A DNA stretch of 64,000 nucleotides from Auanema rhodensis (GCA_964057225.1 OZ059894.1:8494001-8558000); one strand, 5' to 3'. Numbered from the stretch's first letter, positions 27,401 to 59,028 are shown. Notes: generated by a model from the sequence alone, not told the origin. Program-made: numbers and translations.

Positions 27401-30400
27401 ATCAAAATCAACTGCTTGTCAAGTGATTGATTACACGATTACTTTGATTTCCTATTTGACTTTTTGGCCTTTTTCAAATGTCTTTTCAACCCTTCTCGTA
27501 TACATGAATCTCTGTATATAATTTCATCTTTTTTTCCGTATTCTCACCTTTTTAAGTAATTCTTCTCCTTTTAAAGGACTGGTTCGAGATGTTCTTTTGT
27601 TTTCTTTATAAGTCATTTGCGTACTGTAAGTATAGGTGGTTGGATAGCATTCTCAAAATATTTCCAACTTTTGGCTATCAAATTTGAAAAAAAAAACAAT
27701 TTAGATAAACATATATATTATACATTTGTTTAGTATATGTATAGTTCAATATAAATAATAATAGCTAAGTGCGCACATAACAGATTAACCAAGAAGGAGA
27801 TTCAAATACTTACATGATACTTATGTTTTTCCTTCACCGAAACGGGTACAAGTTCAATATTCTGATGCCTATCCTATGCCTAGATGTGTTGCCCTGATTC
27901 TTTACAACTGTTTCTTCTGAATCATTTGTTTGACCTCACTTTCCGGAATCTGATCGACGAATACTGATACGATCATTAGGAAAGGTAAATGTGACATGGT
28001 GACAAACACACTTCCGATAATGGTGAACAGATTAAGAAGAGCGAAAAGTGAAGATCTGCAGCTGGATTTAGATTATGTTCATGGTTTAACGGCGAAAAAA
28101 CACTAATTTTCATGATAGTCTGGAAGTGTTTTTCAAATTTTTTCATCCAAAAAGTGTCTGGTCCTCTAGCACGCAGGTACATGGCGTAATCGAGCATCTA
28201 TATTCATTTTCTTGTTCTTGTTCAAAGATTGTATCTAGTCTATACGATAGCGGCAACTTTTCAACCACGTATTTATAAAATTCCTCTCATTCCTTCGATC
28301 CGTTAACTCGTCAACGTACTTTTTGTCAATTTTTATTATGAGATAATATAGTAAATTGTCCCGTTTTACTATTATTATTCCTCTTCTTTCACCTTGCTAC
28401 TTGGTGCTCTTTGAATTTTTGACAGCTGTGAACAACTAAACCACTGGTTGTTTCTTCTATGGCATCATCCCTTGAACAAAAAGTCGTAAAGTCATCAGAT
28501 TGCTTGATCACACAGAACTCAGCTGTGTCGACATTTTTTCGCTTTCATCTGCCATTCAACATCTGTATGTGTATCTTTCTTCAAACTATCTAGCTACCGA
28601 CACAAGAGATATCGTTGCCGTTCGATGTCGACTTTGTTGGATTTGAAAGACCTTTCCATAAAAGCAACTGATGCTATTCTGTGATTCTAATTGAAGCGAC
28701 GTTTATCATTATGATGGCATCGAGTACATCTACACACTAGAAGAAAACTTTAGTAACAGGTTTTTCAACACCATTATCGTTTATTTACACCAGCATTTCC
28801 TTTTTTTTAAATGGCGACTAGCCGATGTTGCTATCGCTATGAATGTGGCCGATCGAAATGTTAACTGTATTCTCCTCCTCCCAGATAGAAGCAACTACTG
28901 ATTGACAATGGAACAACAAATTGACCGCAACCTGTACAGCATCATAATAACTCATATCATCAGTGTGTATGATGAAAAATAATTCAATTAGGGATTTAAC
29001 CTACAGTTTATTACTTCTTATCTTCGTTTATTATATTTCAAGAATAGCCATTTCACTTTCCTCTTACTCCACTCATGTGACGGTTGGAATGTAGTATGTT
29101 AGTCAGGAGCATAGTACATGATGATTCAGGTGCTTCACCGTTGAAATGAATGTTCATTTACACATCGCATTCTTTACTTTATGCTCATCCAGACTTCTAC
29201 TATAATATTTTCATCGTTAGAAGCGTTCTTCTCGACAACATTATCATGTTCCATCTGCTGTCATACAGAATTAGTCTCGTCAGGTAGCATCGCAAAGACT
29301 TTAAGTTCAGCGTCGTCGTCGTCTTCTTCTTCTTCTTCTTCTTCTCCTTCTTCAACGTCGTCGTTGTCGTCCACCACATAACTTTGACGACTCTACCCCC
29401 ATTTATGTGGCTGGCCTGTTTCGGTATCTAGCTCTGCTTCCTGTTGTCTGTTTCAAATTGTTCGTAATGAATAAGCACATGATACGTCTACAATGTCGAC
29501 CGGAATCATATGATTCCGGTAGAAAGAAACCGCATATTTACAGTAAAAATCATAAATATAGAATAAAACATGCTTGATTAACTTCTATTGTATTGTATTT
29601 ATAATTTATACATTTATATTTTGTATTTCACTACGAAAGAATTGTTTGGAATGTGATAGTTCTATCCCTAACTTCTAAACAATAATAATCGTAGCATGCA
29701 GATTATTAGCCGTATTTTCGAATGATATTGCAAGATGGTCTAAACCACAGGACCGTCCGATGAGACCAGGGCAAGGAAGACATTGTCGTTGACGATTGCT
29801 AAATAGGCGAGAATGTGAGGAATGTACCTCCATCTTTCTTCTATCTCCACCATTCCTATAGTTTCTTGATTTCTCTCAGACGAATGAGCGGCGTTGGAAG
29901 CGGCAAGGACAGTCAAGATGACGAGGAGGTCTCTCGTCTTCTCTTCTCTCTTCTTGAAGTAAACAAATTGCCAATGTTATCTCTCTACGTACGTAAAAAG
30001 TTTGTGAATCTTGATGACACCTTCGTTCCGTATCACTCTCTATTCCTCTATCTCTATCCCTCAAATTTGGCTGAATCTTTTTACCTTTTCTCTCTTTCTT
30101 TCTCTGTTGCTCTTAACTACTCTTTTCTTTTACCTGTTCGACTCTTGCTAATTCCCAACATACGTATTACGTGAAGATATTTGGAAAGAATAAAAAGTAA
30201 TCTTTGTTATCTATTCACTCTTAAGTAGTTTCTAATTTCTTGCAATTTTTGCGCGAATTACCTTACTCACCTGGTTGATTGCGACCTTATTGTCATTACC
30301 GTTTCTTTCAACTGAATCCATTGCCACATGGGAGAATGGCATTTTCCTTTCTATTGATTGATATACTTGATTCATGTGTCAAACAAATCGATTATTCTCT

Positions 30401-31931
30401 TTAAATAAGTTCACAACCAAAAATTTTATCTACTGGCCTTAATCTACTGAACAATGCTTCGGCTCTTTGACGCAACGTCAACACTGTCAGATTTAACCTT
30501 ATGTCGTCGATCGGAATTTAAAGAATTTAATATATTTTCTTTTTTTTCCGAACAACACAACACATATTTTCATTTTTTTTTGATCAATTAATATTTAATA
30601 TAATGATTGATAAAATGCACTATATATGTCTAATACTATATGAAAGTATTTACAATTATTGTCCGGGGACATGTATACATACATATGTCTTTCCACCCTC
30701 TTCAATTCCAATTGCTCAACGATCATCGTAAACCATTGAAGCAGCACCACCGTCTTAGCCTCCAGTTCTGGCAGAGTTATGCAAAAAAAACCCGAATTTG
30801 AATCAGATAACAAGCAACGGGCTGTTCATCATCCTTTAGTATAATTTATGTACAAGCATTTTGCCAACGCTAAATCGGTCTATGTCATTCCTATCGACAT
30901 AATCATAACCACATGTCTATCTACATGTTTTTCTTTGAAATGATCGTGAACGTTATGTCTACGGGTATACAGAAGATGAAAGAATTACGACGACGGCACC
31001 ACGTCAAAACCTGTCGTCCTCGTCATCGGCATTAATGGCAAGCCAGCTTCTCTTTCTCTTTCTTTGATGTCCTCCCCTCTCATTTTCAAAAAGTTTATTT
31101 CCTTTTTTTTCAATTTTTAAAAGTTTAAATGAATCAATATATGATCCGTTTTAAATACAAATCAATCACGTATGCCACATATACTAAGTTCCAAATTTTT
31201 TCAGTCATAATTGACGCTTTTACGCAATATCTCTCCAGAAATTTTTTTTTCATCAATGATAAACAGGCTGATTGATAAAAATTCACAACGCATCTAAATT
31301 TATAAATCAAAATGTAATGCTTTGAGAAAAGTAACCAAAGTTTGATTTTCGTAATTACATCTGTTTATCTGCAACTATGATCAACCATCAAGAAGTCGTT
31401 TTTTCAGTCTAACTTTTGTCTTCTTCAGCTTTTTGCTGTTTAGTCCTCTATCCTTTTTTTTATTCCGTGCAAATAATGTTTTCAAACATTACAAATGTTT
31501 TTTCATTATTCCCTTCGCAATTTCCTATTTTCTAAAAAAAAAGAGAAAAAATTGACCTATAACCTAAACTATTATCAAAAATGAAGTAACAAGATGATGA
31601 ATACCTTATGTTTTGAACATTGAATTGAATTGAAGAATTATTTGAATTTTTTCATCATTGTTTGCAACTAATAAACATATATCTATGATTTATTGTTATT
31701 TTTTACCTGTATGCATGACTTCACTCCATATGACTATAAAATGTTTGAAATTTTTCTATTTTTCCTTATTTCATCATAAACTTTTTCCCATTTTAAGTAT
31801 CAACAATTTTTCTGACTTTACCTTCAACTTTCAATCATTTTCTTTTTCAAAAACTTCTCTTCACGTTTCACGTTGCAATGACGTGAATATTTCTATTTCA
31901 TTTTCATTCTTGTCGACGCATTGACCGGCTG

Positions 31932-31934
<3 letters not shown>

Positions 31935-31997
<63 letters not shown>
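31935..31997. repeat. (TC)n microsatellite, ~31 units
   Basis: Direct reading. Confidence 0.95.
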
Positions 31998-32001
<4 letters not shown>

Positions 32002-33353
32002 ATCTTCCCCTCTGTTGTCGTTAGCTTCCTAACTTGTTTAAACTGCCTTTCTAATAACTTCTCGTAACGAAAAATCAAAGTGGTCAGTTAAAGTTAAGTT
32101 TGTTTTCTAGTTCGATTTCTTGTTGCTCCTCTTACGCAGTGCATTCCGTCGTGCTACTACTGATCTTCCGTTCTATTCGTCTCTTTCTGAAGCCGTTAGT
32201 CAAATACTGGTCCTCATGAACGGAGCATTAACATCTGTTTCAGCTCATTTGTTGACCTGCTTCACGTGTTCTTAGAATTATATCAAAAATAAGATTTAGA
32301 GCTTTTACACATCCACGCAGCTATCTTACTACTGCTTATTTTGGTCATTTAGAAATGTTTTTAATTATTTGTTCTCTTAAATTAAGGAAAATACGTTACT
32401 TTTATTATATCCATATATGTATACCATAAAATATGTATATACATATATTATATATTCTAACTGATTGCAAAGAAAATGACCTGGTCTTATCAATCATCTT
32501 ATTACCATTTAAGGATTTACCGTCACTCTATCTCTCTATCCCTCTTTCTCTCTCTCTCTCTCTTCTTTTTCCACTTATTTCTCTCTTTCATTTTTGTTCT
32601 TTTCATTGTTTTCTACTGTCTCTATCAATACCTGTACATCTTTCTCTCAGTCTCTATCAATCTATTTCTCTCTCTCTCTCTCCAAATGTCTCTATCTCTC
32701 AATACATCCCTATGTCTTGCTCTATCTTTTTTTCCATCATTTTTTCTGCCTTCCTTCTGATTATCTCGCATACTACAATTCCTTGTTCTTTACTGATTTT
32801 ATAACCTGTCTGAAACTCTACTAAATTCTTATTCTCTATCACATACAAATTTCTCTAGTTGAGAGATTAGCTAAATAACTATTGATCATGTATTTCCTGT
32901 AAGTCACAAATGTATAAGGAGTTGAGCTTTTCTGTGTACGAGATGCAAGAGCATTCAATTCAATATTTTGTTTTATTTGTACTATATTTTCTGTATTTTT
33001 TCATTTTGATCGTTTCAATTTTTTTTACTGCATGAACCGATCATTTGTAAATTAGTTGTAATATGAGTAGCCAGTTTTTAAAAAACGTTCGTACTTCTTT
33101 GCTTACCCCTCCAATCCTTACCACATTGCTACCAATACCATTCACAATTTACCTTACCTTGATTTTCTTTTTTTGAGCTTTAATTAAACTTAAACCCGTT
33201 TCAATTTTCTCAATTATTTATTTATTTATTTATTTTTATTGGAAAAATCCATTTTATCCCGTTTATCTTATTTTTTCAAATACAATTCTATTTTTACTAT
33301 TCTTGTTATATTTAGGCAGTTGGACCTTGAAAATCAGTTTGTTAAAAATAAAT

Positions 33354-33355
<2 letters not shown>

Positions 33356-33396
<41 letters not shown>
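33356..33396. repeat. (AT)n microsatellite
   Basis: Direct reading. Confidence 0.95.
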
Positions 33397-33402
<6 letters not shown>

Positions 33403-33984
33403 TATTGACCTTACAATCTCTAGTTCCCTCCCTCCCTCTCTCTCTTTCCCTCTCATTCTCTCTCTCTCTCCCTTTCTCTCACTACTTCTCAGTTTTTTCT
33501 CTCCTATCTCTATCTTATATTCTATATTCTTCTCATATATCGAGAGTCTGACTTTTTTCCATCTTCTTCGTTTTCTCACCATATACACACACAACGCACA
33601 GAAATCTTATGATTTTTATCGCATTATTTCTGGTAATTATCATTTCTGACATTCTTCAAGTTATTTATCCATGTTATACCGTATTTTTCTAATATATGAA
33701 ACTGTATTTCTGTTTATATTTTGCAATTGAAAAGAACTGCAAGTTTTCCCGGTGTAGCTGTCTTAATCAAAGAGATTTTTTTCACTATCATCACAATCAT
33801 GTGTTACATCTTTTAATCTTCGGTTTTTCTAAACATATGTATATTGTTACAATTAATGCTTCCATATTTAGTTTATTAAGTTTTAGTTCAGTAACGTTTT
33901 TTTTATAAATCTAAAGAGCTTCAATTCTGTATATTTTTTATCCCTCTGCCCCGACATCGTTTCTATCTGATATCTATCTCTACC

Positions 33985-33987
<3 letters not shown>

Positions 33988-34036
<49 letters not shown>
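33988..34036. repeat. (TC)n microsatellite
   Basis: Direct reading. Confidence 0.95.
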
Positions 34037-35291
34037 GACACACTCTTTATTACTCTCCCTTAAAGTTTCTACCTCATCACTCTCTCTTTCCCTCTTTACC
34101 CCACCCTATTCAATTTATTTATTTCTTCGATCTCTACATCCACCTCACTTCTACTTTTTCATATCCTCAACTCCTTGTATAACTCTGACCACTTTATCAA
34201 TTAGTGTTTCCGTTTGATATCATTCGTTCTTTTTTCTAGTATTTTGAATGTCGAACGTCTTAACATTTTTTTTGATTTCCTTGCTTCCAATTGAGTCAAT
34301 TATTAGCTTTTCCTTGTTCAATTTTTGATAAGCCATTTGTTCCATGCGATATGATTGCTTCTGACGACAACTTAGAAGATCTCGACCTTTACTATCCAGT
34401 TTTCGCCAATTTAGAGCGTCGGCGAGTAAACAAAACTTCGCCTTGATCATTATACGACAATCATTGACGATAGAATTACCAGTATTCTGTATAGAACTCC
34501 TCAGAGAGAAATCATGCCCGTAAGCAGCATATATTACGTGTACTCCGTAGTTCCTCATATCTCAATGAAGATATGACTAAGGAAATTCCAATCACTGCGT
34601 CATTTCACTAGTTGCTTCTAATTGCACTAAACAACTCTAGCACAGTTGGCATTTTATGAGCCATTCATTCAGATATTCTTATCATTTATTTCAATGTGAA
34701 TAATATCGTTTAGATATAAGATTAATCATAAGTTTTTATACAAAGAACATTTCGCATCAGCATTACCATCAAATAAAAAACATCAGAATGACTCATCAAT
34801 CTCCTGCTTTCGATCTCTGAGTGAAACTTTGGATATTTTGTGTTATTTAAGCTATTCGCTATATCTCTGTTATTCATTTTTCAAGATTGTTCAGAATTTA
34901 GGTCGTTCATTTATTTTTTATCTTTTTATGTTTTTTTAAAAAAAATCATTAAAATTGATCATATACACTCGTCAGAAATTTCTAATATGTCTATTATGCT
35001 GTCCACATTTTATTTTTCCTTTTTTCTTCTTCTTCGTCTACTACATCATCTTTGTCACAGTCTTCTAGTGCATAACGTTGGTCGATGACGTCATGAATGG
35101 TCTTCGATGTTTTCCATCATTTCTTGTATTCGGTTATAGAACTTTTTAATGAACTGTTGACTTAAACAAAGAGTTGAAGAGGGATCAATAGAAATATAAT
35201 AACAGTTTCTACATTACATTTTTCGCTTTTGCTGGTGTCTTTTCGTTTCATTTTGTCCAAGCTGTTGAAAAGTAATTAGAATCCTCTATTA

Positions 35292-35297
<6 letters not shown>

Positions 35298-35340
<43 letters not shown>
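35298..35340. repeat. (TA)n microsatellite
   Basis: Direct reading. Confidence 0.95.
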
Positions 35341-35342
<2 letters not shown>

Positions 35343-38300
35343 TAGAACCGTATAGAATCTAAACAGGTATTTATTCGATCAACGTAGTCGTTGTCTCTGT
35401 CGTCGTACCCCCTGCTTCGGTGTAAGTTCAGCTTGATCTCTCCTATTTCATCTATCTATCACATCCATGTTATCATTTTATTCAGCTTTTATTGTCATTG
35501 TCAAATTGGTTTATTTCTAGCAATGAACTGACGCTTACGCCGTCAGTTCGTCTATTCAAATTCCCGCTTTGAGATAACGATATCTGTTTTTTTTTGATCA
35601 TGTATCAAATGGTCCATTCGTTTAAGCTTATAGTCAAGATTTCGGACAATCAGAGGCCATGACGACGCTAGTTTTAACCTGCCTAACCATTTCGTTATCA
35701 AAGGCTTCTCCTCTGTCATTCCATTCTTCTTAAGAATTTTCATTATTTATTATGTTTGGTAATAACAAAGACGTCACCACAGCTGATGTACCTGATGGCC
35801 ACGAGAAACATAACGTTAACGATGGATATGGAGTTACTAAGATTTGTGAAGGCCAGACGATAGAATAGAAGAAGATATCTTTCTCCTACTTTACTATATC
35901 CCACACATACAAGGTGACCTGACAGTGATGACGGGATTTGCCAAAAGAAATGAGTAGGCTAACAGCCATAAACTGTCCTTGTAACGGTCCGCCGGGTCAG
36001 ATGCGACCTTGACGTCGGCTTTCCGTCGTCGTCGTTGTCGTCGTGGTCTTCGTTATCGTGGCCGTAGCCGTTTACCTGCTATCCGTCGCCATACTCGTCT
36101 CCTTTTTCCACTTCGTTCCTTTTTTCTTGGCTAGTACTTTTTTCTTAATCTTCTCCTTTTGTCACGTGCATCCCTCCACTCATCTTCATGTCTCACACAC
36201 ATCGAAAAACATTTTGATTTTTTATATATTTTTCTCTAATCTATGAAGAATTTTTGTCTCTTCTCAGTCATATACTGCTGGCGTAACGTGAATGTGCTTC
36301 GCAGACTTTAATCTTTTTTTTTGCTATGAGGTATTTTCGAAATGCGATGTTTGCTTACTAGTTGTATATCATCTCTGTAGATTTACATTTCTTGTACATA
36401 CCGTTCACAGCTCCAGATAACACATTCCTACAATCAACAGGAAGACGGGTTTCGGCATTTGTCAGCTTATTTTCACTCCTAATACTCTTATCAATTGTGT
36501 TGGACTCATTAGATATTTATTCGGACAGGTGGCCAATTTTTAATATTCTCTTTGTATAACCTTTGTTTTACTTTTTCCCTCGTATCCCTCCACGTATAAT
36601 AACCGATTTGCTCATTCTCCTGGTTCAGCTTTCAAGAATCTCTTCATGTTCAATATCTTGTATCTCTTTTCATATCACTTATTTCAATACACAAAGAAAT
36701 ATATAGAGAACATGTAACGAAGAGGTATAAGGGTGGTCATCGTCTAACATGCCCCTTGCAGTCCCTGATCTTTTTTCTGTTAACCACAATCATTGCGTAG
36801 CTGAATTGGAGAAAGATTGGCGGTTACGAGAGACATAAGACCGTTAACGGTTAGGGATTCAGACATTCATATATGAAAAGAAAGAACATGCATTCCAATC
36901 CTCATACAGACAAGGTATGCTGAACCCTCTTTCCCCCTCTCTCTTTTTCTCTCTCTCTCTCTCCCTCTCTCTCCTATTTCTCTCTTTCCCTGTAGACATT
37001 TCTCTTTCTTCTCTATCACCTTTCGCTCTCTCTGTTCCTTATTTCTCCCTTCGTTTCTTGCCCCGTATCACTTACGTAGTGTTGGGATCGACAACCGGTT
37101 ACCGGTTCTCTGCACCATCTCCCGTACACACTACCCAGTCTTTTAACCATTCCAACCCTATCTCTGCGATATCACCTTTGTCGTCTCCCCTTTCGTCTAT
37201 CATCATCATCATCGTCGTCGTCTTCTTTTTATTCTTCATCTTCTTCATATTGATACCATCGCATCCTTCACCACCGCTGCACCACAACCGCAGCAGCTAA
37301 ATAATTTGACAGCATTCCGTAGCATGACAGCAATCACAAATTGATCAGTTTTTTCATATTGTTATCTTTTTTTTCGTCTACTATGTTTACGTTCAAACAT
37401 TTAGTTTTAGCCGTTTACCTCATGTATTGACATCAAATCAGATACGAGCATAGCTGTCAAGAAACTTTCTATTTGCCATCCTTGATTGTTCTTCTTTACC
37501 GATGACCTTCTTCACCTGTTTTGATCTTAATCAGCAGCTGCAAGTTTCAGCTTCTAGTCTAACTGATCTATATCGGAGCACAGCACGTGAATGTCATTGC
37601 CTTACGCACTATCCCACCAGCGATAACCAATTTTGGAGTTCAATTCGTTGTCTATGAGCTGTTTTGATTTTTGCTCTCATTCCATCATTCAGTGTTTTCA
37701 TTTTTTCTAACTGCCTTGTTGTATTTTTTTGCATTTTTTATGAAAAAATAGCTTTTTTTGTATTTAAACTTCCATTTATATCAATCATCACTTTTAATTG
37801 TTTCTGATTTTGGAATTCTTCAGATTTGACCAATGTTACCAGAGAAATTGCACATGAAAGAATCTCATTCTCTTGTATTGTTACTTTTCTTTTGAAAAAA
37901 TTTTATTCGTTGTTGTTTGAGGATCATTCCATTCGTTTAAAAAAGCTTGTAAACATGAGGTTTCTATCTTGCAGATGTTTGTTTCGCAGTTCTTTACAGC
38001 CCATGAACAGAACTTCCATCTCTCAAAATAAGCATCGTTCCAATTCTTTTGCTTATAGCTTGCTAATAAATTCGAACCATTTTAATAGGTTTGTATACTT
38101 TTTCTCAAGTGCATCATATCACATTCTTGATCAACATTTATTATTATTCATTTACATGGTCTGTGGTTTTGGCTCCTTTTGCTTTTATTTGAATAATTTT
38201 TACTTGGCTCTCGTTTTCTCATTACCCACATCAATTATCACTCCTATCACTTTTCTCTTTCTACCTACTTTCTTAGGAATTATTGTTTTATGTTGGTAAA

Positions 38301-38932
38301 GCAGCATTGAAGATTTGAATTTATAATCAGATTGTATACTCTTACGTAAAATATTGTTTCGATGCAATCGTTACAACATCTAATTATGTGAAAATCTCAG
38401 ATTTTTTTTGTAGATATCATACTCAGATTATTCATATCGCTATGTTCTCAGTTCATCTACTTGACTCTGTCTGATTCTTTCTCTTTTCTCTGTTGTTCTC
38501 CATCTACATAATCAACCAAGAAGCCCCCAGAATTCCGACGGCCCATTATTAATAGGAGGAAAATTTTTCTTATCTGCCGATAAGAAAATTCTTTCGCATT
38601 TATGGGCTGTTAAGATTCTCTGCATCCACTACACTCTCTCATTTCCTTCCTATCAACTCTGCATGCTTTTCACCTCTCAGCCGAAAGCCCGTTCTTCCTA
38701 ATTTATTTTATTTTTTTTTATCTTTGCCATCAAGCTTGAAATTCTGTGAAAGTTTGAATTTTCACAGCACACCTAATGGAATGTTCACGTACTCTGGCTA
38801 TTTCTAAGTTTAGGTTTTTATTTTTATACAATTATCCTGAACCAAAGCTTAGTATGACAGATTACAACTAATAATTCGGTTTAAAATTCCTTCTCTTTTC
38901 ATTCTCTCCCTCTCTCTCAACCTCTTTATCTT

Positions 38933-38934
<2 letters not shown>

Positions 38935-38963
<29 letters not shown>
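38935..38963. repeat. (TC)n microsatellite
   Basis: Direct reading. Confidence 0.9.
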
Positions 38964-38965
<2 letters not shown>

Positions 38966-40859
38966 CAACCTACATAACTACCTAACTAATTCTATCTCTT
39001 TCCCTTTGCTATATCTTTAGCTTTTTGACTAAGAAACTTTTTTCTGTTCGGCATAAGCAAATATAGATAATAATCCAATCAGCAATCTCTTTGCTCATTT
39101 CCAGTAATTGGTTTTGATAATCAGCTGAATAGTATACTTTGTCATTCTCCCTCCTCTCTCACCGATACGTTTTTCTTTTTTTTCTATTTTTCAGCAGCTA
39201 TTCTTTCTATTAATCTGTCTGGCTACCGTTTTCAATCGCCTTGTCTGGCGCTTTGTCCTCATTCTTTGAGAAGTTCAACAAGCTTTACTCACAATACAAA
39301 CTTAGATTTTTACGTTTTCAAAATGTTTCTATATCGATTATATGATGTCTATTCTCTGTTGTGATTACATTTTTCTTTCATTTTTTATTTCACCTATATA
39401 GATATATTCTTTAGTTTTATTTTTCTTCTCGCTTTTTTTACATCTTTTCATCTAAATTTGTTTTTTTTCTTTACCTCTCTCTCTCTACCGCCCCATCATC
39501 TCTCTCTCTATCTCTCTCTCTCCCCCCCCTCTCTCTCTCTCTCCCTGGTTAATTCATTTTTCCTATCCTCTTCCATATTCTCATATCTCTTGTTCTTCTG
39601 CAGTTTTTGAATTCGGTCTATTTTCTTCGATGTTACTCATTGATTATTTTATATCATAACACAATACATTATGTTAATCTTTTTACTATTGTATTTCAAC
39701 ATTCTTATATAATTTTATACTTTATTTATATGTCTTGATTAATATCATCTGTTGTTTTAATAGCTTAAACGCTCCTTGCTTTTAAATTCTATTTTTTTTG
39801 TATACACTAAGACGTTTTAACTATCTACAATGTAGCACTCACTTCTACTCTTTGAGTTTTTTCTTTCTCTTCCCTTTACAGTCGCTTTTTGCATATTTTC
39901 TGGATATACAACATTATTATTCTAAAAATATTCTTATGATTAAGTTCAAACTATATTTACTGGTTTGTTACTTCTTCTTCCCATTATCTTTATGCAATTT
40001 TGCTAACAACATGACTAATAGTTGTGCCATAAAACAGTTAAACTTTCTGTTGCATCTCTATTTTCATTTTCTAATTTTATAGAAATGAATTAACCTATAG
40101 CTTTAGATGAGCAAAGCAATCATGTTCTAACTATATCAAAGAGCAAGTTGTAGTGTTTACGCTTAATGTTCCGAAAGTCTAGTGTGTGCATTTCCTCGTT
40201 ACCTCTCTTGTTCTCAACTTAATATTTCACTTGAACTGTGTGTGTAATCAAGTTATCATCATCATTTAACTGTTTGTGTGGAAATTACATAAAAAGTGAT
40301 GTTCAAAACGTTTCAAAAATCATCTGGAACATTCCTGAGAATCTTTCATAATTATTTTGTCTAAGTCCTGGTGATAAATTCGAAGACGCCGGACACCGAA
40401 AGACGGAAAGACAGTAACATTCACAGATAGCCGTCAACATTCCTAGCTCAGATCGATTTCTTGTTCTTATCGATAAAGATAAGAGAAAATTACAAGAAAA
40501 TCAGCTAAAACTCCTATTCTATGTTTCTGAAAATTTATAATAGAAAAAGGAGAATGTTGGCTCGCATATTAAATTTATTATTATTTGTAATATTTTGTCT
40601 TCTCATCGAATTCAAAATTTATATCAAATTCCACATATGTTTCAAATATTTTTTATAAACATTTCTCAATTCTTGTCGCTATCAGCACATGTAATAGAAA
40701 GGAATAGCGTTCGGCTTTTCCTTTTTCCAATCAAGCTGCATGTGGCTGCGTTATAGTTTTCCTTCACTCTTTATAAGAATGATGGAATGCCAAAGTAACG
40801 ATGAAAAGTCGAATAGTTATCTTCTGTATGTGAGACATCGATAGAGAAAAAGAATGAAG

Positions 40860-40946: not shown

Positions 40947-41797
40947 GAAAGTTAGTCTTATGTGTAAAATTATTACAGTAATGTTTCATACACACACATA
41001 CATACACACATATGTATACCATTCACATTTTTAGAAGACGTAATATGATTCGTTCTTGCTACTTACGAATATATGTTCATGAACACTTGCCCTCGTCTTA
41101 TTGTTAAACTGTTGAATATCATCACGCTCTCTTGAAGCTTTCTGTTTGCCTTTGACGATCATAACCAAAACTGTCTATCCCACAATAATCTGTGATCATT
41201 TGTTGATGTTGGCTTGGCTACTGGCCAGTTAATAAGTACTGGTAGTTTGAAACACTGAGAATCGGAAGAGGCTCTGGCAAAGAGACACCTCTTCATCCGA
41301 TTCATGTTGTTTAGTTGATATGCGTCGAAATGCTGTTGCTTGCAAATTCCACAGGTATTTGTTATTAAAGCTCTAATACAGCTTTGCAAGCTGCAAAAAA
41401 CCAAAACTCCCTCTAATCAACATTTTTGCAAAAAGGTATTTCAAGTCGTTAACAGTTCAGTGTGAAAAGCAAATCCTGCACCGCCACTAGTACTCTCACT
41501 TTCTCTGATTTGTTCTTAATCTCCTTAATCTACTATCAGCTTTCTGCATTTTTTCGCATCGTTTCATTAACATTCAGAACGTGTCTAAGTTGTTCATATG
41601 TAGTCAGTTGATTTACCTGCTGTCAATTTTATTGCTCGAAGATATTTTAAACCCGTGACAAGCTTTATGTTGTTGATTTTGGTTTTTTTTTGTTTTTTTT
41701 CCTTCTCATATGTTATTTCGTCTAGATACTTTGTGAATATATAGAGATAGATAGATATATTTTCATTCATTTCAGTACAAGATTGAATGCGCAGGTA

Positions 41798-42811
41798 ATG
41801 GAATCACCGTGCTCGACGCCGAGCTCCAGTCGGTCGCGCGGCGTCACCAACGACAGCGCAACCTCATCACGACTGCCACATCATCTTCTGCAACCATCCT
41901 CAAGCAACTCAGGTAAATATTTCGAATGTTTTTTCTACTTTGAAGCATTCTGAAGTATTTATTCATTTATGATCAAAGTTTTACAACGGATTGATATATC
42001 CACCATTATCTATTCTAACATGATGACAACGAATATCAAATTAGCTTTTCATTTTTTCACAATGTCAATCCTACGTTCATAAATCAATATAAGAGTATTG
42101 TCACATACATATCATACATAGTTTCTTGAATATCTTGTGATATCAAACTATGTAATCTATTCAATTAGATCACGTTATTTTTGTCTTTTATGCCTGAGAG
42201 TACATAAAAGTATCCTAGACTAATGGGGGGGGGGGACTACAGATGTCAAGGACAACCCGAGTTTCATGGTTTCTCAGGTTATTATAAAGATTTTTGCCAA
42301 TTATCATTGTTATTATATATCTATATTAAATCAAATAAATTCCGATGATTAGTCATATATACTATCACTCATAAGCTACTCGTACCCTCTGGAAAACGGA
42401 GCAATCATAATAAACTAACTGATTACTCATAGAAACAAATAAATCAACAATAAGCTAATCGTACACATTAAATTTGGCCAATATAATTCTTACCTGCTTA
42501 CTCATATTCCTATATTTCAGGCCCTGCTGTGCATTCTACGTCAGAACATAGTATTCGTCCTGGTCAACCATACGTCACTGTACAAACTCTGAATAAAGAA
42601 AATCTGGTTATCGTAGTTAATGTAAGTTTTATTTTTTAATTTTCTTTCCTTCCTCTCTTTTTTCTATGAATTTTTACATGAATGAATGAAGCTTATTAAT
42701 TAGCATAGATAGTATTTTCACGTGTAAAATAGGCGCGTGACTTAGTTTTCTAGTTTAATCATCCAGTGAACGGTTGCTTTTTAATTCATCTTTTTTTTAT
42801 TTAATTCATTG

Positions 42812-42853
<42 letters not shown>

Positions 42854-45800
42854 ATTATTTTCTGTTTATAATTCTTATGTAAAAAAGTTATCAGTTTTAT
42901 TACATAGGATTATCAGTCGTCAAATTCTTAAAATTATATTCTCTTACATGATGTATTATCAGTTGAGAAATTTGATACATCATGAGCTACAACTTCTAGT
43001 TCAGTTCTTTATTTAAATGTTTTTTTTCAGCAAAAAACCCGCGTTCATGATATTCTGTGGAAATGCGGGGAAATTCTTGAAATAACAGAAGATAAACTGT
43101 TTGGATTAGCCTTACGACAACCAACAGATGGTATAGGTATAGCCTATAATCAAGTCTATAATTATAACTTTTAAAGCATATTTAGGAGGAGATCAACCAC
43201 GACATGAATATTTTTTTCTGGATCCCGCCCAGAAAATCTTCAAATATGCGCCAAAGCAACCTCGATTTTCTAACTGGGTAAGTAAGCTTCTTCTTCTCAA
43301 TGTTGACTGACTTGTCATAATTTCCATTCTTCAGCATAATCGAAGTACGGAAAATCGACCGTTGCTAGTTTTGTATTTTCGAGTCCGTGTGTACATAGAA
43401 CAAGTACGGTTAATTACGTAAGTATATTATATTCATTTTTTCAAATCGTTTTTGAGTAACTATCGATTAAAGTCATCTTTGAATAAGAAACACAGATAGG
43501 AAATGATAAAGAGGGTGAGATTGGATGCTTGATTTCGGGATCATTTTCTGATCAACGTATGTGAAATAGAATACAGAAAGACACCGAGGGAAATTCTAAA
43601 TCATATCATATCATATTTCATATTGTATTTAAAAGACAAAGCAAAGGCGTTAGAATATGAGAGATAACATTCCATGATCATCTTTGGCTTCATACCAATT
43701 TCGCTTTCAATAACGGTCTGGAAGGTATCATTTCATGATATTGGTTTCGGAATTTCTTTTCTCTTTCTCATCGTTATAGAACATGTTCTAACATAGATCT
43801 ATTATCCCTTTCTTATATCTTTATATGTATATATGTATACATATAATTAGAAAGAGAGAGGGAGAGAGAGAGAAAATCTGTGGGATCCATACGCAAATTA
43901 TAGGCAACTTGTTCACTCTAGTCACTGTTGATTTCAATTTCTTCGATTTTAAGAAATATAAATATCCACCAAATCCTCATATGATATGCAAAGCGCAACC
44001 TTAATTTGAATTAAATAATAAATAAAAATTTATTTCAAGAGGGAATTGATATGATTAATTTCGGAAAATGGGGGAATGCAAATGAAAATACTTTTCTTTA
44101 ACTACCATATAAAGATATAATATCTCATCATATACTTTCATCATTTGTTTTTCAGATGTTCGAGAGCATTAGAACATTACTATTTGCAATTAAAAGATAA
44201 TTTTCTGGACCAATGGTCTGGACGACATAGTGTATCTGAAGGCCGATGTTGGGAAATGGCGTCCCTCGCGTTAAGAGCCGATAAAGGGGATAACCCTGGA
44301 GGGTATGACCTGATAATACAATAGCCTTTTCTTACCATAATGTCTTTTAGCTATTTTCGTGCAGAACAGTACTTTCCAATGTGGGTAATAGATTTCCGTG
44401 GTTTGGAATACGTGCGTAAACATATGCCAACAGCTTTTGATGATCTCAAAGACCTCTCTAAGAAAGATGCCATGACTCAGTTTTGTCTAGAAGCTTGTCG
44501 GTATGTTTATTAACTAAACAAGCGTTATTTTATTTACATTCTTATAGATCCCCCTTTGCCTTAAACTGTCATTTGTATGCTTTACGACGGCACAAAATGG
44601 ACAGTGTAGATAATGCTGTTATTGGAATAAATGCCAAGTAAGGCTAAAAATATGAATAAATAACTATTTTATCCTTTTTCAGAGGAATTGAGATATGTGA
44701 TATTGGAAAAGAGTTTGAACGAGTACCGCTACGGTCATTGACTTGGAGTCGAGTGACCCGGCTTTCTTTCGATAGAAAGAAACTTACGATAGTTGGAGCG
44801 GATGGCACAAAGATGTCGCTATATGCTCAGAGCGAACATAAAGCGAAGTAAGAAAACTTGAAAATAAACTTTATGCTTATAACATGTTTCTCCAGATATC
44901 TGTTAGAACTGTGTCGTGCTGTACATCAGACCCTTCTTGTATTTTCACATCAAACGGCTCGCAATGCTCCTTTGCCACAGCCATTCCTGGAAAAAAGTGT
45001 AGATAGATTGTCAGCCTCATCAGCATCCGGGGCTGTCACAAACGATAACGGTAAACTTTCTACAAAAGGGTCGCAAAGAAAGAATTCCTTTTTTCAGATT
45101 CTGATTCAGTTGTACAAGATTCAATGAGTAGTTGTGATAGAGGACAAGGATCAGTAAACTCGAAACATCGTATTCGAGTTAAACTTGATTCAAATTTAGA
45201 GCTTAAAATCGAAAAAATGGAACTCGAGAGTAAGACTAATTTGTTTTTAACTGTTTTTTTATTTGTAGAATTCAGGTATTCGACAGGAAAGAGCAGCCAG
45301 TCAATCATCAAAGGCATCTGAAAGCAGTGAGCATCGAACATCCGATATCACATCTTTCCCGACAGACGATGAAGTACAGTTCTCAATTCCTTCAGTTGAG
45401 ATTATTCAACTACCTTCTGCTAATTCTTCTGCTTCCACCACAGAATCCACTACAACGTAGTAAGCATTACAGACCATTACTCATAATTACATAAACTATT
45501 CAGTCGGCCGTCCTCTGTTGATTCTGCTTCTCAAACAGTTGAGACAGGTACTCGGATTGGTCAAGTGGATTTTAACTTCAATAACAAGCTAGATCATATT
45601 GAGCATGATGGGTTTGCTTCTTCTGCTACTTTCGGCAACATGGTATTCATGGTACAAATTTTAAAAAACACATAAATCTTCAATGAAATATTTGCAGCCT
45701 GAAGCACAGTATGCTAGCTCTGCTGGATCTAGAAGCGATTCAGTTCAGCAATCTAATGAAATGCTTCCTGATCTTATGATAAACAGTTATCATCATCATG

Positions 45801-47210
45801 AAAAGTGCTCAACTACTTCTGATGATGATGCTGATACAACCCTCCGATCTGGAAATATGACAGGAGCTTCTCTTTCCTTATCTGATCTCCGAAGTGCTGG
45901 TTTCAAAGATACACCATCCAGATATTTGGAAGATCCTCCAGATTATAGAGTTCAACGGTTGGTAGTCAATCTTTTAAAATACTAACTATGATCATATGGT
46001 ATAGAGCTGGTTCGCCAGGAGGGAAACAACGCTGGACTATGGCATGTGGAACATCTTGTATGACACAATCCATGAACGCATTAGGATCATCCGGTCAAGC
46101 TAGAAGTGAACCCAAAATAGATTCTGAGGTATGTATTAAACTATTTATTTAGTTTTAACTATTTTTTGTCTTTTCAGTTATGGGCTCCTACAACACCTGT
46201 AGCTCTACTCAGTTCTCCAGGTCCATCAAATGGCCGTTTATTTACTAAGCGAGGAAATTCTGGTGCAAGTCGAATGGCTCCCAGTATTAGCCGCGTTCAC
46301 TCCATGCCTGCACATTATCATATAGCTAATGGCTTTGTTCGAAATGTAAGTAAACTATATTATATGTTTTCACAATACAGTTCTCTTTTCCAGAGTCAGA
46401 CCGATGACTATCCACAAACAACAAGTCTACAGCATGTTCAATCTTTAAACGGGCCACGAACACAGCCGAAAGCTAGAGATCCACCTCCATATGATCGAGC
46501 CGCTCCTCATACCTTGTCTGTTTCCGCTGCAAGGTAATAAAACATTGAAAAACGCTGGTACCACAAGTATTTTCAGCGTTTTAACTGGAAATACATCAGC
46601 CGGTCCGTTAACGGCAGAAACACCAGGTGGACCACAAGCAGCGTTTCCTCCAGCCTCAGCTACGCCGTCCATGTTCTGCACCAATACAGAAGAACAATAC
46701 TTTTTGGACACGGTACATTCCTAGATATCTATAATCGTCCTAATTAAAATCTATTTTCAGGGCGTACTATCAGCAAACGAACTTCAGCATTTCCCAATGC
46801 TGCAGAAACTGATGCGAGAATCTAATGGAATGTTAAATCACCAACGACGACCATCTAGTTGTACCGATTTAAGCAGTTAGTTTTATAAGGTTATTCATAC
46901 ATTGATAATCAAAAATTCCTTCTAGGTATGTTCTCAAATAGCGTTCATCGTGGAGAATTCTTCCCTGATTCTACCGTACAGTCAGTACCGTATGGCATGA
47001 CAAGAATGCAAAATCAGAACCCCAATTCGTAAGTTGCTTTACAATCATTAATACTGAAGTTTATTATAGTTCTTGTACTTATAAGCTTCTAATATTTTGT
47101 GAAGATTAGTAATTTTATTATATTCTAGATACGGATTCCGTCCATCAAGTGCTGTCGTACTTCCTCCTCCACCTCCATATCCATCAAATCGAAAGGCCTT
47201 GGTGATGTAA
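41798..47210 (+). CDS. FERM-domain protein of the Expanded/FRMD6 (Willin) type with a low-complexity tail carrying three PPxY motifs; multi-exon
   Basis: Exons from 41776/41798-41912, 42521-42621, 43031.., 43186-43277, 43335-43417, 44156.. give LFGLALR...EYFFLDPAQKIFKYAPK...RPLLVLYFRVRVYIE...HYYLQLKDN, the Expanded/FRMD6 F1-F2 pattern, followed by an F3 lobe (WSRVTRLSFDRKKLTI). Ends VLPPPPPYPSNRKALVM* (TAA 47208-47210). The frame is open from the 41776 acceptor, so the N-terminus may extend upstream. Confidence 0.85.
42813..42848. repeat. (TA)n microsatellite in a FERM-gene intron
   Basis: Direct reading. Confidence 0.95.
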
Positions 47211-47754
47211 TGCAATAAATAAGCATACTTTCATGTTCCTAAAATTCCTCAGCCACAACCTTTCCCATTTCTAGCTCGAACCAAATTTTAGTGTCTATGC
47301 GAAAGGTTAACAAATTTGGTTATCTCAGCCTATATCACCATACACCCACACATGCTCACTTCATATCTATCTCAACACCTGCTCTCGTGCTATGTACTAT
47401 CGTTCTCGTTGTTCAATGTTGTCGAATAATTTGTCGCTTGTCTTGCCTGAAGCAGAGTACAATCTGTTCCAAACCTCTCTCCGTCTTCTCTCACGGCTTT
47501 TCAATCACATTCTCTGCTACTTATCTCCTGTCATATCCTTGTAGAAGGACCAGAAGAACATTCAAATGCTCTTGTCAAGTATTTTTAAATATATAGTATA
47601 AAACTTTCAAAGGTGAACCTTTTTTTTATAAATGAAGATGAAAATATAAGACAATACAAAACAAAATAATAGAAGATATGATTTAATATAAAATTTCTTC
47701 GATGAACTTTATGAACTACGTTTTAAAATTAATATCAATATACTATAACCATAC

Positions 47755-57560: not shown

Positions 57561-57632
57561 GGGCCGAACCGGGAATTGAACCCGGGACCTCTCGCACCCG
57601 AAGCGAAAATCATACCCCTAGACCATTCGGCC
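57561..57632 (-). tRNA. tRNA-Pro(CGG) copy 1 (C27U, wobble-tolerated)
   Basis: GGCCGAATGGTCTAGGGGTATGATT(T)TCGCTTCGGGTGCGAGAGGTCCCGGGTTCAATTCCCGGTTCGGCCC cloverleaf, anticodon CGG. Confidence 0.9.
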
Positions 57633-57804
57633 ATGAAGTTTAGAAGTAATTTTCAAAAAATAGGAGAGTTTTCGTGAAATTGTTAATTTATAGTATATTC
57701 TTTAACTTGTTTAGTCATTTTTTCACAAAAAAGGACAAAGCGTGATGATTAGATTATGAATCAGAATCATTAATACTTCGAATTGAGTTAACAAATCAAA
57801 AATT

Positions 57805-57876
57805 GGGCCGAGCCGGGAATTGAACCCGGGACCTCTCGCACCCGAAGCGAGAATCATACCCCTAGACCATTCGGCC
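57805..57876 (-). tRNA. tRNA-Pro(CGG) copy 2 (U66C, A7:C66 mismatch)
   Basis: One substitution from the array consensus. Confidence 0.85.
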
Positions 57877-58048
57877 ATGAAGTTTAGAAGTAATTTTCAA
57901 AAAATAGGAGAGTTTTCGTGAAATTGTTAATTTATAGTATATTCTTTAACTTGTTTAGTCATTTTTTCACAAAAAAGGACAAAGCGTGATGATTAGATAA
58001 TGAATCAGAATCATTAATACTTCGATTTGAGTTAACAAATCAAAAATT

Positions 58049-58120
58049 GGTCCGAACCGGGAATTGAACCCGGGACCTCTCGCACCCGAAGCGAGAATCA
58101 TACCCCTAGACCATTCGGCC
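58049..58120 (-). tRNA. tRNA-Pro(CGG) copy 3 (C71A acceptor-stem mismatch)
   Basis: One substitution from the array consensus. Confidence 0.8.
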
Positions 58121-58293
58121 ATGAAGTTTGAAAGTTATTTTCAAAAAATAGGAGAGTTTTTGTTGAATTGTTAATTTATAATTTATTCTTGAACTTGTTT
58201 AGTCATTTTTTTACAAAAAAGGACAAAGCGTGATGATTAGATAATGAATCAGAATCATTAATACTTCGATTTGAGTTATCAAATCAAAAAATT

Positions 58294-58365
58294 GGGCCGA
58301 ACCGGGAATTGAACCCGGGACCTCTCGCACCCGAAGCGAGAATCATACCCCTAGACCATTCGGCC
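58294..58365 (-). tRNA. tRNA-Pro(CGG) copy 4
   Basis: Array consensus, intact A/B boxes. Confidence 0.95.
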
Positions 58366-58537
58366 ATGAAGTTTGAAAGTTATTTTCAAAAAATAGTAGA
58401 GTTTTTGTTAAATTGTTAATTTACAGTATATTCTTTAACTTGTTTAGTCATTTTTTTACAAAAAAGGACAAAGCGTGATGATTAGATAATGAATCAGAAT
58501 CATTAATACTTCGATTTGAGTTAACACATCAAAAATT

Positions 58538-58609
58538 GGGCCGAACCGGGAATTGAACCCGGGACCTCTCGCACCCGAAGCGAGATTCATACCCCTAGAC
58601 CATTCGGCC
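58538..58609 (-). tRNA. tRNA-Pro(CGG) copy 5 (U25A, D-stem)
   Basis: One substitution from the array consensus. Confidence 0.85.
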
Positions 58610-58782
58610 ATGAAGTTTGAAAGTTATTTTCAAAAAATAGTAGAGTTTTTGTTAAATTGTTAATTTATAATATATTCTTTAACTTGTTTAGTCATTTTTT
58701 TACAAAAAAGGACAAAGCGTGATGATTAGATAATGAATCAGAATCATTAATACTTCGATTTGAGTTATCAAATCAAAAAATT

Positions 58783-58854
58783 GGGCCGAACCGGGAATTG
58801 AACCCGGGACCTCTCGCACCCGAAGCGAGAATCATACCCCTAGACCATTCGGCC
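58783..58854 (-). tRNA. tRNA-Pro(CGG) copy 6
   Basis: Array consensus. Confidence 0.95.
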
Positions 58855-59028
58855 ATGAAGTTTGAAAGTTATTTTCAAAAAATAGGAGAGTTTTTGTTAA
58901 ATTGTTAATTTATAATATATTCTTTAACTTGTTTAGTCATTTTTTTTACAAAAAAGGACAAAGCGTGATGATTAGATTATGAATCAGAATCATTAATACT
59001 TCGAATTGAGTTAACAAATCAAAAAATT

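What the first reader, a model, noticed from the sequence alone, without database searches (positions are those of the whole stretch)
41798..47210. Nematode Expanded-like FERM protein with three WW-binding PPxY motifs: candidate direct YAP/Yorkie tether
Seen: the FERM F1-F2 lobes follow the Expanded/FRMD6 pattern. The otherwise disordered tail carries PPDY (45935-45946), PPPY (46481-46492) and a near-terminal LPPPPPY (47160-47180), each in frame in a different exon. There is also a short amphipathic segment, FPMLQKLMRE. Established: Drosophila Expanded binds the Yorkie WW domains through C-terminal PPxY motifs, whereas vertebrate FRMD6 lacks that tail, which is usually treated as an arthropod feature. 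Inference: this nematode has a fly-style Expanded that could sequester YAP-1 directly. I do not know of a characterised nematode equivalent, but could not search.
Basis: partly seen in the sequence, partly recalled or inferred. Interest (0 to 1): 0.8.

Follow-up and report, generated by a model that had tools for sequence, protein, structure and literature searches.

The report
Nematode Expanded orthologue with conserved PPxY motifs
This is an expressed nematode gene, the counterpart of C. elegans frm-7 and fly Expanded; its flexible tail carries proline-tyrosine docking motifs kept across most sampled nematode lineages (one lost in most Caenorhabditis), so it is a testable but unproven candidate for holding the growth co-activator YAP-1 at the membrane.

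Summary
A 21-exon, 931-aa gene (41798-47210, + strand) is confirmed intron by intron by spliced transcript contigs, which corrected two of my exon ends.

The protein is the orthologue of Caenorhabditis FRM-7. Its FERM domain scores 100-173 bits against Expanded/FRMD6/FRMD1 proteins, 54-77 against FRMPD2, and about 25 against Merlin/ERM. In a tree it falls inside the protostome Expanded/FRMD6 group.

In 27 nematode orthologues from clades III, IV and V:
- the middle PPPY and the C-terminal PPPPPY are among the best conserved tail positions;
- a first PPxY is widespread but lost in most Caenorhabditis;
- in this species the first site has decayed to TPSRY, and PPDY lies four residues further on.

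Ten nematode tails hold 31 PPxY motifs, against 1.6 expected by chance.

PPxY tails also occur in a priapulid, some gastropods, an annelid and spiders. They were absent from every deuterostome sampled. This conflicts with the published view that the Expanded C-terminus is arthropod-only, although common ancestry of the tails is not shown.

Binding to YAP-1 is untested. Databases already call some orthologues "Protein expanded", but I found no functional study of frm-7. I rate this a new member of a known kind, of moderate interest.

The parts
41798..47210 (+). Coding span of the FRM-7/Expanded orthologue: 21 exons, 931 aa
   Evidence: Open frame across GT..AG introns. Spliced transcript contigs from 4 runs match without any differing letter.
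41774..41797 (+). 5' UTR. Transcript contigs start at or near a TTTCAG acceptor (41770-41775), so trans-splicing is likely. It holds a 3-codon uORF (ATG 41787, stop TAA 41796-41798) whose stop overlaps the main ATG.
   Evidence: Contig starts at 41774 and 41795; sequence read. Trans-splicing is inferred, not shown.
41798..41912 (+). Exon 1
   Evidence: Joint 41912 to 42521
42521..42621 (+). Exon 2 (start of FERM F1)
43031..43136 (+). Exon 3; its end was corrected by the RNA contigs
   Evidence: Joint 43136 to 43186
43186..43277 (+). Exon 4
43335..43417 (+). Exon 5
   Evidence: Joint 43417 to 44156
44156..44302 (+). Exon 6 (FERM F2)
   Evidence: Pfam FERM_M 1.2e-6
44351..44500 (+). Exon 7 (FERM F2)
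   Evidence: Pfam FERM_M 2.3e-6
44548..44637 (+). Exon 8
44683..44847 (+). Exon 9 (FERM F3)
   Evidence: Pfam FERM_C 1.2e-4. This piece was the query that found the orthologues.
44896..45050 (+). Exon 10: end of the FERM domain plus the degenerate post-FERM degron position ASGAVT (45023-45040)
45098..45229 (+). Exon 11 (conserved helix, LELKIEKMELE)
45276..45459 (+). Exon 12
45504..45651 (+). Exon 13; its end was corrected by the RNA contigs
   Evidence: Joint 45651 to 45698
45698..45957 (+). Exon 14
45911..45925 (+). TPSRY (aa 628-632): decayed copy of the conserved nematode PPxY site 1
   Evidence: Alignment block
45935..45946 (+). PPDY (aa 636-639): lineage-specific replacement motif four residues after the decayed site
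46005..46128 (+). Exon 15 (RWT and ARSEPKID islands)
46178..46345 (+). Exon 16
46289..46315 (+). SRVHSMPAH island (RxxSxP, resembles a 14-3-3 mode-1 site)
   Evidence: Conservation 0.89 across 27 nematodes. Function is inferred.
46394..46533 (+). Exon 17
46481..46492 (+). PPPY (aa 770-773): conserved site 2
   Evidence: Conservation 0.88, 98.5th percentile of tail 4-mers. Present in C. elegans at aa 712.
46577..46712 (+). Exon 18
   Evidence: Contig coordinates
46761..46875 (+). Exon 19
   Evidence: Contig coordinates
46791..46820 (+). FPMLQKLMRE: conserved amphipathic helix island, (F/Y)PMMxxLWQE in orthologues
   Evidence: Predicted helix 807-823 in the H. contortus orthologue.
46839..46871 (+). 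HQRRPSSCTDL island; it fits the LATS/NDR consensus HxRxxS
   Evidence: Conservation 0.80. Kinase assignment is inferred.
46926..47028 (+). Exon 20, with the HRGEFF island (46946-46963)
47129..47210 (+). Exon 21, including the stop codon
47160..47183 (+). LPPPPPYP (aa 916-923): conserved site 3, nine residues from the C-terminus
   Evidence: Conservation 0.94, 99.8th percentile of tail 4-mers. Present in nearly all nematode orthologues.

Best explanation
The gene encodes the nematode orthologue of Drosophila Expanded and vertebrate FRMD6/FRMD1, the family named FRM-7 in Caenorhabditis.

Shown here:
- an N-terminal FERM domain of the Expanded/FRMD6 type;
- a tail of about 560 aa that is predicted to be disordered and carries short, strongly conserved linear motifs;
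- among those motifs, class-I WW-domain ligands (PPxY) at three places.

Inferred mechanism. The FERM domain places the protein at the apical or junctional membrane. The PPxY motifs recruit WW-domain proteins of the Hippo network there. The partner with the clearest precedent is YAP-1, held out of the nucleus independently of phosphorylation, as fly Expanded does with Yorkie. I put YAP-1 among the in-vivo partners at about 0.4-0.5.

Two further conserved islands suggest that the tail is itself regulated by phosphorylation, possibly by WTS-1 and 14-3-3. These are HxRRPSS (LATS-type consensus) and RVHSMP (RxxSxP).
For: Real, expressed gene.

Family assignment:
- The nearest non-nematode relatives are mollusc 'FRMD6' and 'protein expanded-like', spider 'FRMD1' and amphioxus 'FRMD6-like' (E 1e-41 to 1e-30). 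The next family, FRMPD2, reaches only 5e-13.
- The window FERM scores 100-173 bits against Expanded/FRMD6 proteins, 54-77 against FRMPD2 and 26-28 against FERM-PDZ phosphatases (PTP).
- Merlin/ERM structures score about 25 bits.
- A profile search finds no other FERM family at E <= 1e-10.
- In the ML tree the nematode clade (100/100) sits among protostome Expanded/FRMD6 proteins.
- The post-FERM motif SSNTTSG(I/V)VSD is the fly Slimb degron 452-TSGIVS-457 (PMC6768662). It is shared by most nematode orthologues and the whole family, and is absent from the outgroups.

Fold: the FERM fold has TM 0.70-0.76 to moesin and merlin, and the tail has pLDDT below 50.

PPxY: 31 observed against 1.6 expected in ten nematode tails. 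Sites 2 and 3 are among the most conserved tail positions. A new PPDY beside the decayed site 1 suggests selection to keep a motif there.

Precedent and context:
- Fly Expanded tethers Yorkie through PPxY:WW contacts (Badouel 2009 and Oh 2009, as cited in PMC6768662 and PMC4962007).
- C. elegans frm-7 mRNA is membrane-localised and apically enriched in epidermis (PMC9793419).
- YAP-1 is regulated in epithelia, and inputs upstream of WTS-1 are only partly known (PMC13147543).
Against: - No binding or genetic data exist for any nematode orthologue.
- PPxY motifs do not discriminate between YAP, NEDD4-family ligases, KIBRA/WWC, Salvador or MAGI WW domains.
- Outside the post-FERM degron region, the nematode tail shows no significant profile similarity to arthropod Expanded tails, so the PPxY motifs may be convergent.
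- The Slimb-type degron is degenerate in this species (ASGAVT) and lost in strongylids, so regulation differs from the fly.
- C. elegans yap-1 mutants are superficially wild type (PMC13147543), so any phenotype may be subtle.
- The tree had only FRMPD2 as outgroup. Other FERM families were compared by score only.
Confidence: 0.5

Rival explanations
1. The PPxY motifs mainly recruit NEDD4-family HECT ubiquitin ligases (WWP-1 and relatives). These would control FRM-7 turnover or the endocytosis of its membrane partners, rather than tether YAP-1.
For: PPxY, and especially LPPPPPY next to a C-terminus, is the classic NEDD4-family ligand (established knowledge). Fly Expanded levels are tightly set by several ubiquitin ligases (PMC13482807). 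The Slimb-type degron has decayed in this lineage, so another degradation route would be plausible.
Against: There is no direct evidence. Two to three motifs kept for the whole of chromadorean evolution, alongside a LATS-type site, fit a signalling scaffold at least as well. This reading is not exclusive of YAP-1 binding.
Confidence: 0.25
2. The motifs dock other WW scaffolds of the Hippo or junction machinery (a KIBRA/WWC-like protein, SAV-1, MAGI-1). This would assemble the kinase cassette at the membrane, so any effect on YAP-1 would be indirect, through WTS-1.
For: Fly Expanded forms a complex with Kibra and Merlin (PMC4962007; that the Kibra contact is WW:PPxY is my recollection of Genevet 2010 and Yu 2010, not checked here) and recruits Hippo and Warts (PMC6768662). 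The conserved HxRRPSS island suggests proximity to a LATS/NDR kinase.
Against: Untested. Whether the relevant nematode WW proteins are co-expressed is not known from this work.
Confidence: 0.2
3. The PPxY motifs are chance products of a proline-rich, low-complexity tail and have no function.
For: The tail is 8% proline and disordered. The window's own PPDY is poorly conserved (0.25).
Against: Chance expectation is 0.075 per tail against 3 observed, and 1.6 against 31 across ten species. Sites 2 and 3 are positionally conserved across clades III, IV and V.
Confidence: 0.02

Closest known systems
Drosophila Expanded (Ex)
   Same: N-terminal FERM domain of the same family. A post-FERM TSGxxS position. 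A long disordered tail with several PPxY motifs, including an RDPPPY-type site and a proline-run PPPPPY. An HxRxxS site lies in the distal tail.
   Different: The tail is about half as long, and outside the degron region it shows no significant profile similarity. The degron is degenerate in this species. One PPxY sits almost at the C-terminus, followed by a conserved ...PMVM end. Yorkie/YAP binding is shown for the fly protein only.
Vertebrate FRMD6 (Willin) and FRMD1
   Same: Same FERM family, and the same post-FERM TSG motif.
   Different: The three FRMD6-type vertebrate (fish) proteins and the other deuterostome members sampled are short (583-761 aa) and have no PPxY motif. No FRMD1 and no tetrapod protein was sampled. 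The review literature proposes that AMOT supplies the PPxY function in mammals (PMC4962007).
Caenorhabditis FRM-7 (C. elegans NP_506085.2 / Q9XXK4; C. briggsae CBR-FRM-7)
   Same: Direct orthologue: 48% identity overall and the same tail islands. Sites 2 and 3 are present (aa 712 and 936 in C. elegans).
   Different: The Caenorhabditis species sampled, apart from C. auriculariae, have lost site 1 altogether but keep TSGIGS after the FERM domain. The window species keeps a PPxY in the site-1 region and has a decayed degron. That the C. elegans protein bears the name frm-7 is inferred from its CBR-FRM-7 orthologue.
Angiomotin (AMOT) family
   Same: Membrane- or junction-associated protein that tethers YAP through PPxY:WW contacts, so it has the same proposed working principle.
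   Different: It has no FERM domain and is unrelated in sequence. It is a functional analogue only.

Membership tests
Expanded/FRMD6/FRMD1 (Ex/Willin) FERM family | N-terminal three-lobed FERM domain (F1-F2-F3) | tested here: met
   Pfam FERM_N, FERM_M and FERM_C on exon pieces and on orthologues. The AF2 model of the H. contortus orthologue has pLDDT 70-90 over aa 40-365. Foldseek gives TM 0.70-0.76 to moesin and merlin FERM domains.
Expanded/FRMD6/FRMD1 (Ex/Willin) FERM family | FERM sequence groups with Expanded/FRMD6/FRMD1 rather than with other FERM families | tested here: met
   Bit scores are 100-173 against the family, 54-77 against FRMPD2, 26-28 against FERM-PDZ phosphatases (PTP) and about 25 against Merlin/ERM. 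Profile search. ML tree. Caveat: only FRMPD2 served as outgroup in the tree, and other C. elegans frm genes were not fetched.
Expanded/FRMD6/FRMD1 (Ex/Willin) FERM family | Conserved post-FERM SS-N-T-TSG-(I/V)-x-S motif (fly Slimb/beta-TrCP degron 452-TSGIVS-457) | tested here: inconclusive
   Present in most nematode orthologues and in every other family member checked except spiders and two mites, and absent from the outgroups. The window protein has ASGAVT at the same place (aa 393-398), and strongylids have lost it. A family signature is therefore visible, but the motif is probably not a working degron here.
Fly-type Expanded (Yorkie-tethering) | Several PPxY motifs in the C-terminal tail | tested here: met
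   Three motifs are present. Two are positionally conserved across nematode clades III-V.
Fly-type Expanded (Yorkie-tethering) | Direct binding of the PPxY motifs to Yorkie/YAP WW domains, with cytoplasmic retention | not testable with these tools
   This needs binding assays or genetics. No complex prediction tool was available.
Fly-type Expanded (Yorkie-tethering) | Tail homologous to the arthropod Expanded C-terminus | tested here: inconclusive
   hhalign aligns only the degron region (P 7e-5); the PPxY regions give P of about 0.03-0.04. Nematode-only island HMMs hit insect PPxY sites above shuffles, but not the HxRxxS island.
Merlin/ERM | ERM-type FERM domain plus C-terminal ERM association domain | tested here: not met
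   Best PDB matches (Merlin, Drosophila 'Moesin/ezrin/radixin homolog 2' chain) reach only about 25 bits. No ERM C-terminal Pfam domain occurs in any orthologue.

The most novel reading that the evidence does not exclude
The WW-binding PPxY tail of Expanded is not an arthropod invention. It is an ancestral ecdysozoan, or even protostome, feature kept under strong constraint in chromadorean nematodes. On this reading FRM-7 is the missing membrane-proximal, kinase-independent tether of YAP-1 in nematodes. Through its HxRRPSS and RVHSMP islands it would also be a WTS-1 substrate and 14-3-3 client, and so a feedback node of a more complete nematode Hippo pathway than is currently assumed.
Probability: 0.25. 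Interest if true: 0.65.

Novelty: new member of a known kind. Interest (0 to 1): 0.45.

Why it matters
Whether nematodes have a Hippo pathway upstream of WTS-1 has been debated. A 2026 C. elegans study (PMC13147543) maps kinases above WTS-1 but does not mention an Expanded orthologue.

The results here give a concrete experiment in C. elegans. FRM-7 orthologues keep two PPPY motifs in nearly all sampled nematode lineages. They also keep a LATS-type site and a 14-3-3-like site. The endogenous YAP-1::mNG reporter already exists for reading out the effect of mutating them.

The results also qualify the published statement that the Expanded C-terminus is restricted to arthropods. PPxY-bearing Expanded/FRMD6 tails occur in nematodes, a priapulid, some gastropods, an annelid and spiders, and in no sampled deuterostome.

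Tried and rejected
- phmmer of single exon pieces against PDB sequences found nothing useful.
- The window's own full-length protein could not be handed to the protein tools because it is split by introns. I used orthologues found with the exon-9 piece and did all whole-protein comparisons in scripts.
- Bossuyt 2014 (PMC4613760) and Zhang 2015 (PMC4650594) are not held. The 'arthropod-only' claim and the Warts-protected C-terminal degron are therefore cited second-hand.
- Supplementary Table 1 of PMC3620549 has an 'expanded' column for C. elegans, A. suum and B. malayi. I located it but did not read those rows, so what that paper records for the nematodes is unknown to me.
- The whole-tail HMM and hhalign against non-nematode tails aligned only the degron region.
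- A regex for the HxRxxS...(D/N)L(S/T) island matched Diptera and Hemiptera Expanded strikingly. The pattern was written after seeing both groups, and an unbiased nematode-only HMM did not recover it, so I treat it as a lead only.
- The profile search found no enoplean (clade I/II) nematode orthologue. That search is word-limited, so the blank says nothing about their absence.
- The species could not be named. The runs are coded, and the tree places it in Rhabditina outside Caenorhabditis plus Strongylida/Heterorhabditis.
- An earlier-findings search by words returned nothing.
Full report
**Observation**

Reading 41500-47500 and joining canonical GT..AG introns gives one open frame from the ATG at 41798 to the stop at 47208-47210. 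Four public runs of one study hold spliced contigs of about 3.2 kb. These lie on the gene without any differing letter. They show 15 introns as joints, and the other five follow from the contig coordinates.

The contigs moved two of my donor sites: exon 3 ends at 43136 and exon 13 ends at 45651. The product is 931 aa from 21 exons. The contigs begin at or near a TTTCAG acceptor 22 bases upstream of the ATG. That fits a trans-spliced nematode mRNA, but this is inferred.

Shuffling the tail predicts 0.075 PPxY motifs, and P(3 or more) = 5e-5. Exon pieces match Pfam FERM_N, FERM_M and FERM_C.

**What it is**

A search with the exon-9 piece found full-length relatives. Word and profile searches with these relatives named the family:
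- Caenorhabditis proteins, including CBR-FRM-7, and C. elegans NP_506085.2;
- filarial and Aphelenchus proteins called FRM-7;
- two UniProt entries called 'Protein expanded (inferred by orthology to a D. melanogaster protein)'.

The window protein is about 60% identical to strongylid and Heterorhabditis orthologues and 48% identical to those of Caenorhabditis.

Outside nematodes the nearest proteins are mollusc 'FRMD6' and 'expanded-like', spider 'FRMD1' and amphioxus 'FRMD6-like'. A second search from a mollusc member connected these to insect 'protein expanded' and vertebrate FRMD6.

Bit scores of the window FERM domain:

| Compared with | Bits |
|---|---|
| Expanded/FRMD6/FRMD1 family | 100-173 |
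| FRMPD2 | 54-77 |
| FERM-PDZ phosphatases | 26-28 |
| Merlin/ERM (solved structures; H. contortus orthologue as query) | about 25 |

A 74-row maximum-likelihood tree puts the nematode clade (support 100/100, long stem) in the protostome part of the family. It sits beside lophotrochozoans and the priapulid-plus-arthropod group. Deuterostome FRMD6 and the FRMPD2 outgroup are on the other side.

A second family mark is the motif SSNTTSG(I/V)VSD just after the FERM domain. In fly Expanded this is the Slimb degron 452-TSGIVS-457 (PMC6768662). It is present in most nematode orthologues and throughout the family, and absent from the outgroups. It is degenerate in this species (ASGAVT) and lost in strongylids.

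An AF2 model of the H. contortus orthologue has a confident FERM domain and a tail below pLDDT 50, with three short helices. The FERM part matches moesin and merlin structures at TM 0.70-0.76.

**The tail**

In an alignment of 27 nematode orthologues from clades III, IV and V, mean column conservation is 0.69 in the FERM domain and 0.38 in the tail. Sharp conserved islands stand out of the tail:
- S(L/M)HDLR followed by site 1, (K/R)QPPxY;
- KPRWTTV;
- ARSEPK(I/L)D;
- INRV(H/Q/K)SMP(A/S)H, conservation 0.89;
- site 2, (R/K)(D/Q/N)PP(P/S)YE(R/H)A, conservation 0.88;
- HxRRPSSCxDL, conservation 0.80;
- (H/Y)RG(D/E)Y;
- site 3, DLPPPPPYP, conservation 0.94, close to a conserved ...PMVM end.

Ten nematode tails hold 31 PPxY motifs where shuffling predicts 1.6.

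Site 1 was lost in the Caenorhabditis species sampled, except C. auriculariae. In the window species the orthologous column reads TPSRY, and PPDY lies four residues further on. This looks like local motif turnover under selection to keep one there.

**Beyond nematodes**

PPxY motifs per tail in the proteins fetched:

| Group | PPxY motifs |
|---|---|
| Insects and a crustacean | 1-5 |
| Priapulus | 2 |
| Gastropods Patella, Physella, Littorina | 4, 3, 1 (none in Haliotis, Aplysia) |
| Annelid Owenia | 1 |
| Spiders | 1 |
| Mite Oppia | 1 |
| Nemertean Lineus, scorpion, two other mites | 0 |
| Most bivalves | 0 (1 in Saccostrea) |
| Cephalopods | 0 |
| Deuterostomes sampled (echinoderms, hemichordate, amphioxus, fishes) | 0 |

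A review citing Bossuyt et al. 2014 states that the Expanded C-terminus occurs only in arthropods (PMC4962007). The motif distribution found here does not fit that statement.

Common ancestry of the tails is not shown, however. Profile-profile comparison aligns only the degron region (P 7e-5 against arthropods, 1.5e-4 against molluscs, 1.4e-3 against deuterostomes), and the PPxY regions are not significant. Island HMMs built from nematodes alone hit insect PPxY sites above all shuffles, which mostly reflects the motif itself.

A distal island looked strikingly alike in nematodes (LLSHQRRPSSCIDLTSEYV) and Diptera (LSTHSRYASTQNLSDTYV). That pattern was written after seeing both groups, and the unbiased HMM did not recover it. 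It remains a lead only.

**Mechanism**

Shown:
- an expressed Expanded/FRMD6-family protein;
- a disordered tail;
- conserved class-I WW ligands.

Inferred:
- The FERM domain brings the protein to the apical membrane. C. elegans frm-7 mRNA is membrane-localised and apically enriched in epidermis (PMC9793419).
- The PPxY motifs dock WW proteins there. By the fly precedent the first candidate is YAP-1.

NEDD4-family ligases and WW scaffolds such as KIBRA-like proteins, SAV-1 or MAGI-1 are equally compatible with the sequence, and these partners are not mutually exclusive.

HxRRPSS fits the LATS/NDR consensus, and RVHSMP fits RxxSxP. This suggests regulation by WTS-1 and 14-3-3, in loose parallel to the Warts-protected C-terminal degron reported for fly Expanded (Zhang 2015, as cited in PMC6768662 and PMC13482807).

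**Known or new**

The orthology is already in databases, and the gene has a name. In the library I could search, frm-7 appears in three papers, none of them functional. A 2026 study of C. elegans Hippo signalling mentions neither FRM-7 nor an Expanded orthologue. I found no report of the conserved PPxY and phospho-site islands.

I therefore rate this a new member of a known kind. It comes with a directly testable hypothesis and a modest correction to a published evolutionary statement.

Noticed in passing
window 26614-40790 and 43667, 44073: The TEAD-type site RCATTCC occurs 25 times in the window against 13.4 +/- 3.8 expected, and no shuffle of 100 reached 25. Twelve copies lie in the 14 kb upstream of the gene and two in its large intron 5.
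   Followed up: partly
window 57561-64000, minus strand: A tandem array of 26 tRNA-Pro(CGG) genes at a period of about 245 bases. A 27th unit is cut by the window end and was called tRNA-Thr(CGT) by ARAGORN.
   Followed up: partly
window 41787-41800: A three-codon upstream ORF (ATG CGC AGG TAA) lies in the 5' UTR. Its stop overlaps the main start codon (TAATG), an arrangement that can couple termination to reinitiation.
   Followed up: no
window 46839-46871; insect Expanded proteins P0149, P0157, P0159, P0160, P0162, P0165, P0142, P0146: The nematode island HQRRPSSC(I/T)DL(T/S)S(E)YV resembles the dipteran Expanded island HSRYASTQNLSD(T/S)YV and the hemipteran HNKFASNQNLSDYY. It is a possible shared LATS site or degron. 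The regex was written post hoc (0.007 hits expected in shuffles against 23 sequences), and an unbiased HMM test did not confirm it.
   Followed up: partly
Orthologues P0034, P0032, P0035, P0003 compared with P0037: The Caenorhabditis species sampled have deleted PPxY site 1 together with its flank. C. auriculariae keeps it (KKPPSYDEP).
   Followed up: partly
Orthologues P0051, P0067, P0069, P0011 and spiders P0074, P0077, P0078, P0083: Ascarids carry a fourth motif, PPPP(V/I)YRGEYY, at the position where rhabditids have only HRG(D/E)(Y/F)(Y/F). Spiders have IPPPPAYRN(E/D), and a crustacean, a priapulid and an odonate have PPPPPYR. This may be a further shared site.
   Followed up: no
P0037 (C. 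auriculariae), P0058 (Steinernema hermaphroditum): These public gene models look fused to neighbouring genes. P0037 has a transthyretin-like Pfam domain at its C-terminus, and P0058 has an N-terminal extension of about 370 aa.
   Followed up: no
window 42816-42850, 43850-43876, 42224-42234: Simple repeats lie inside introns: a (TA)n run, a (GA)n run and a G11 run.
   Followed up: no
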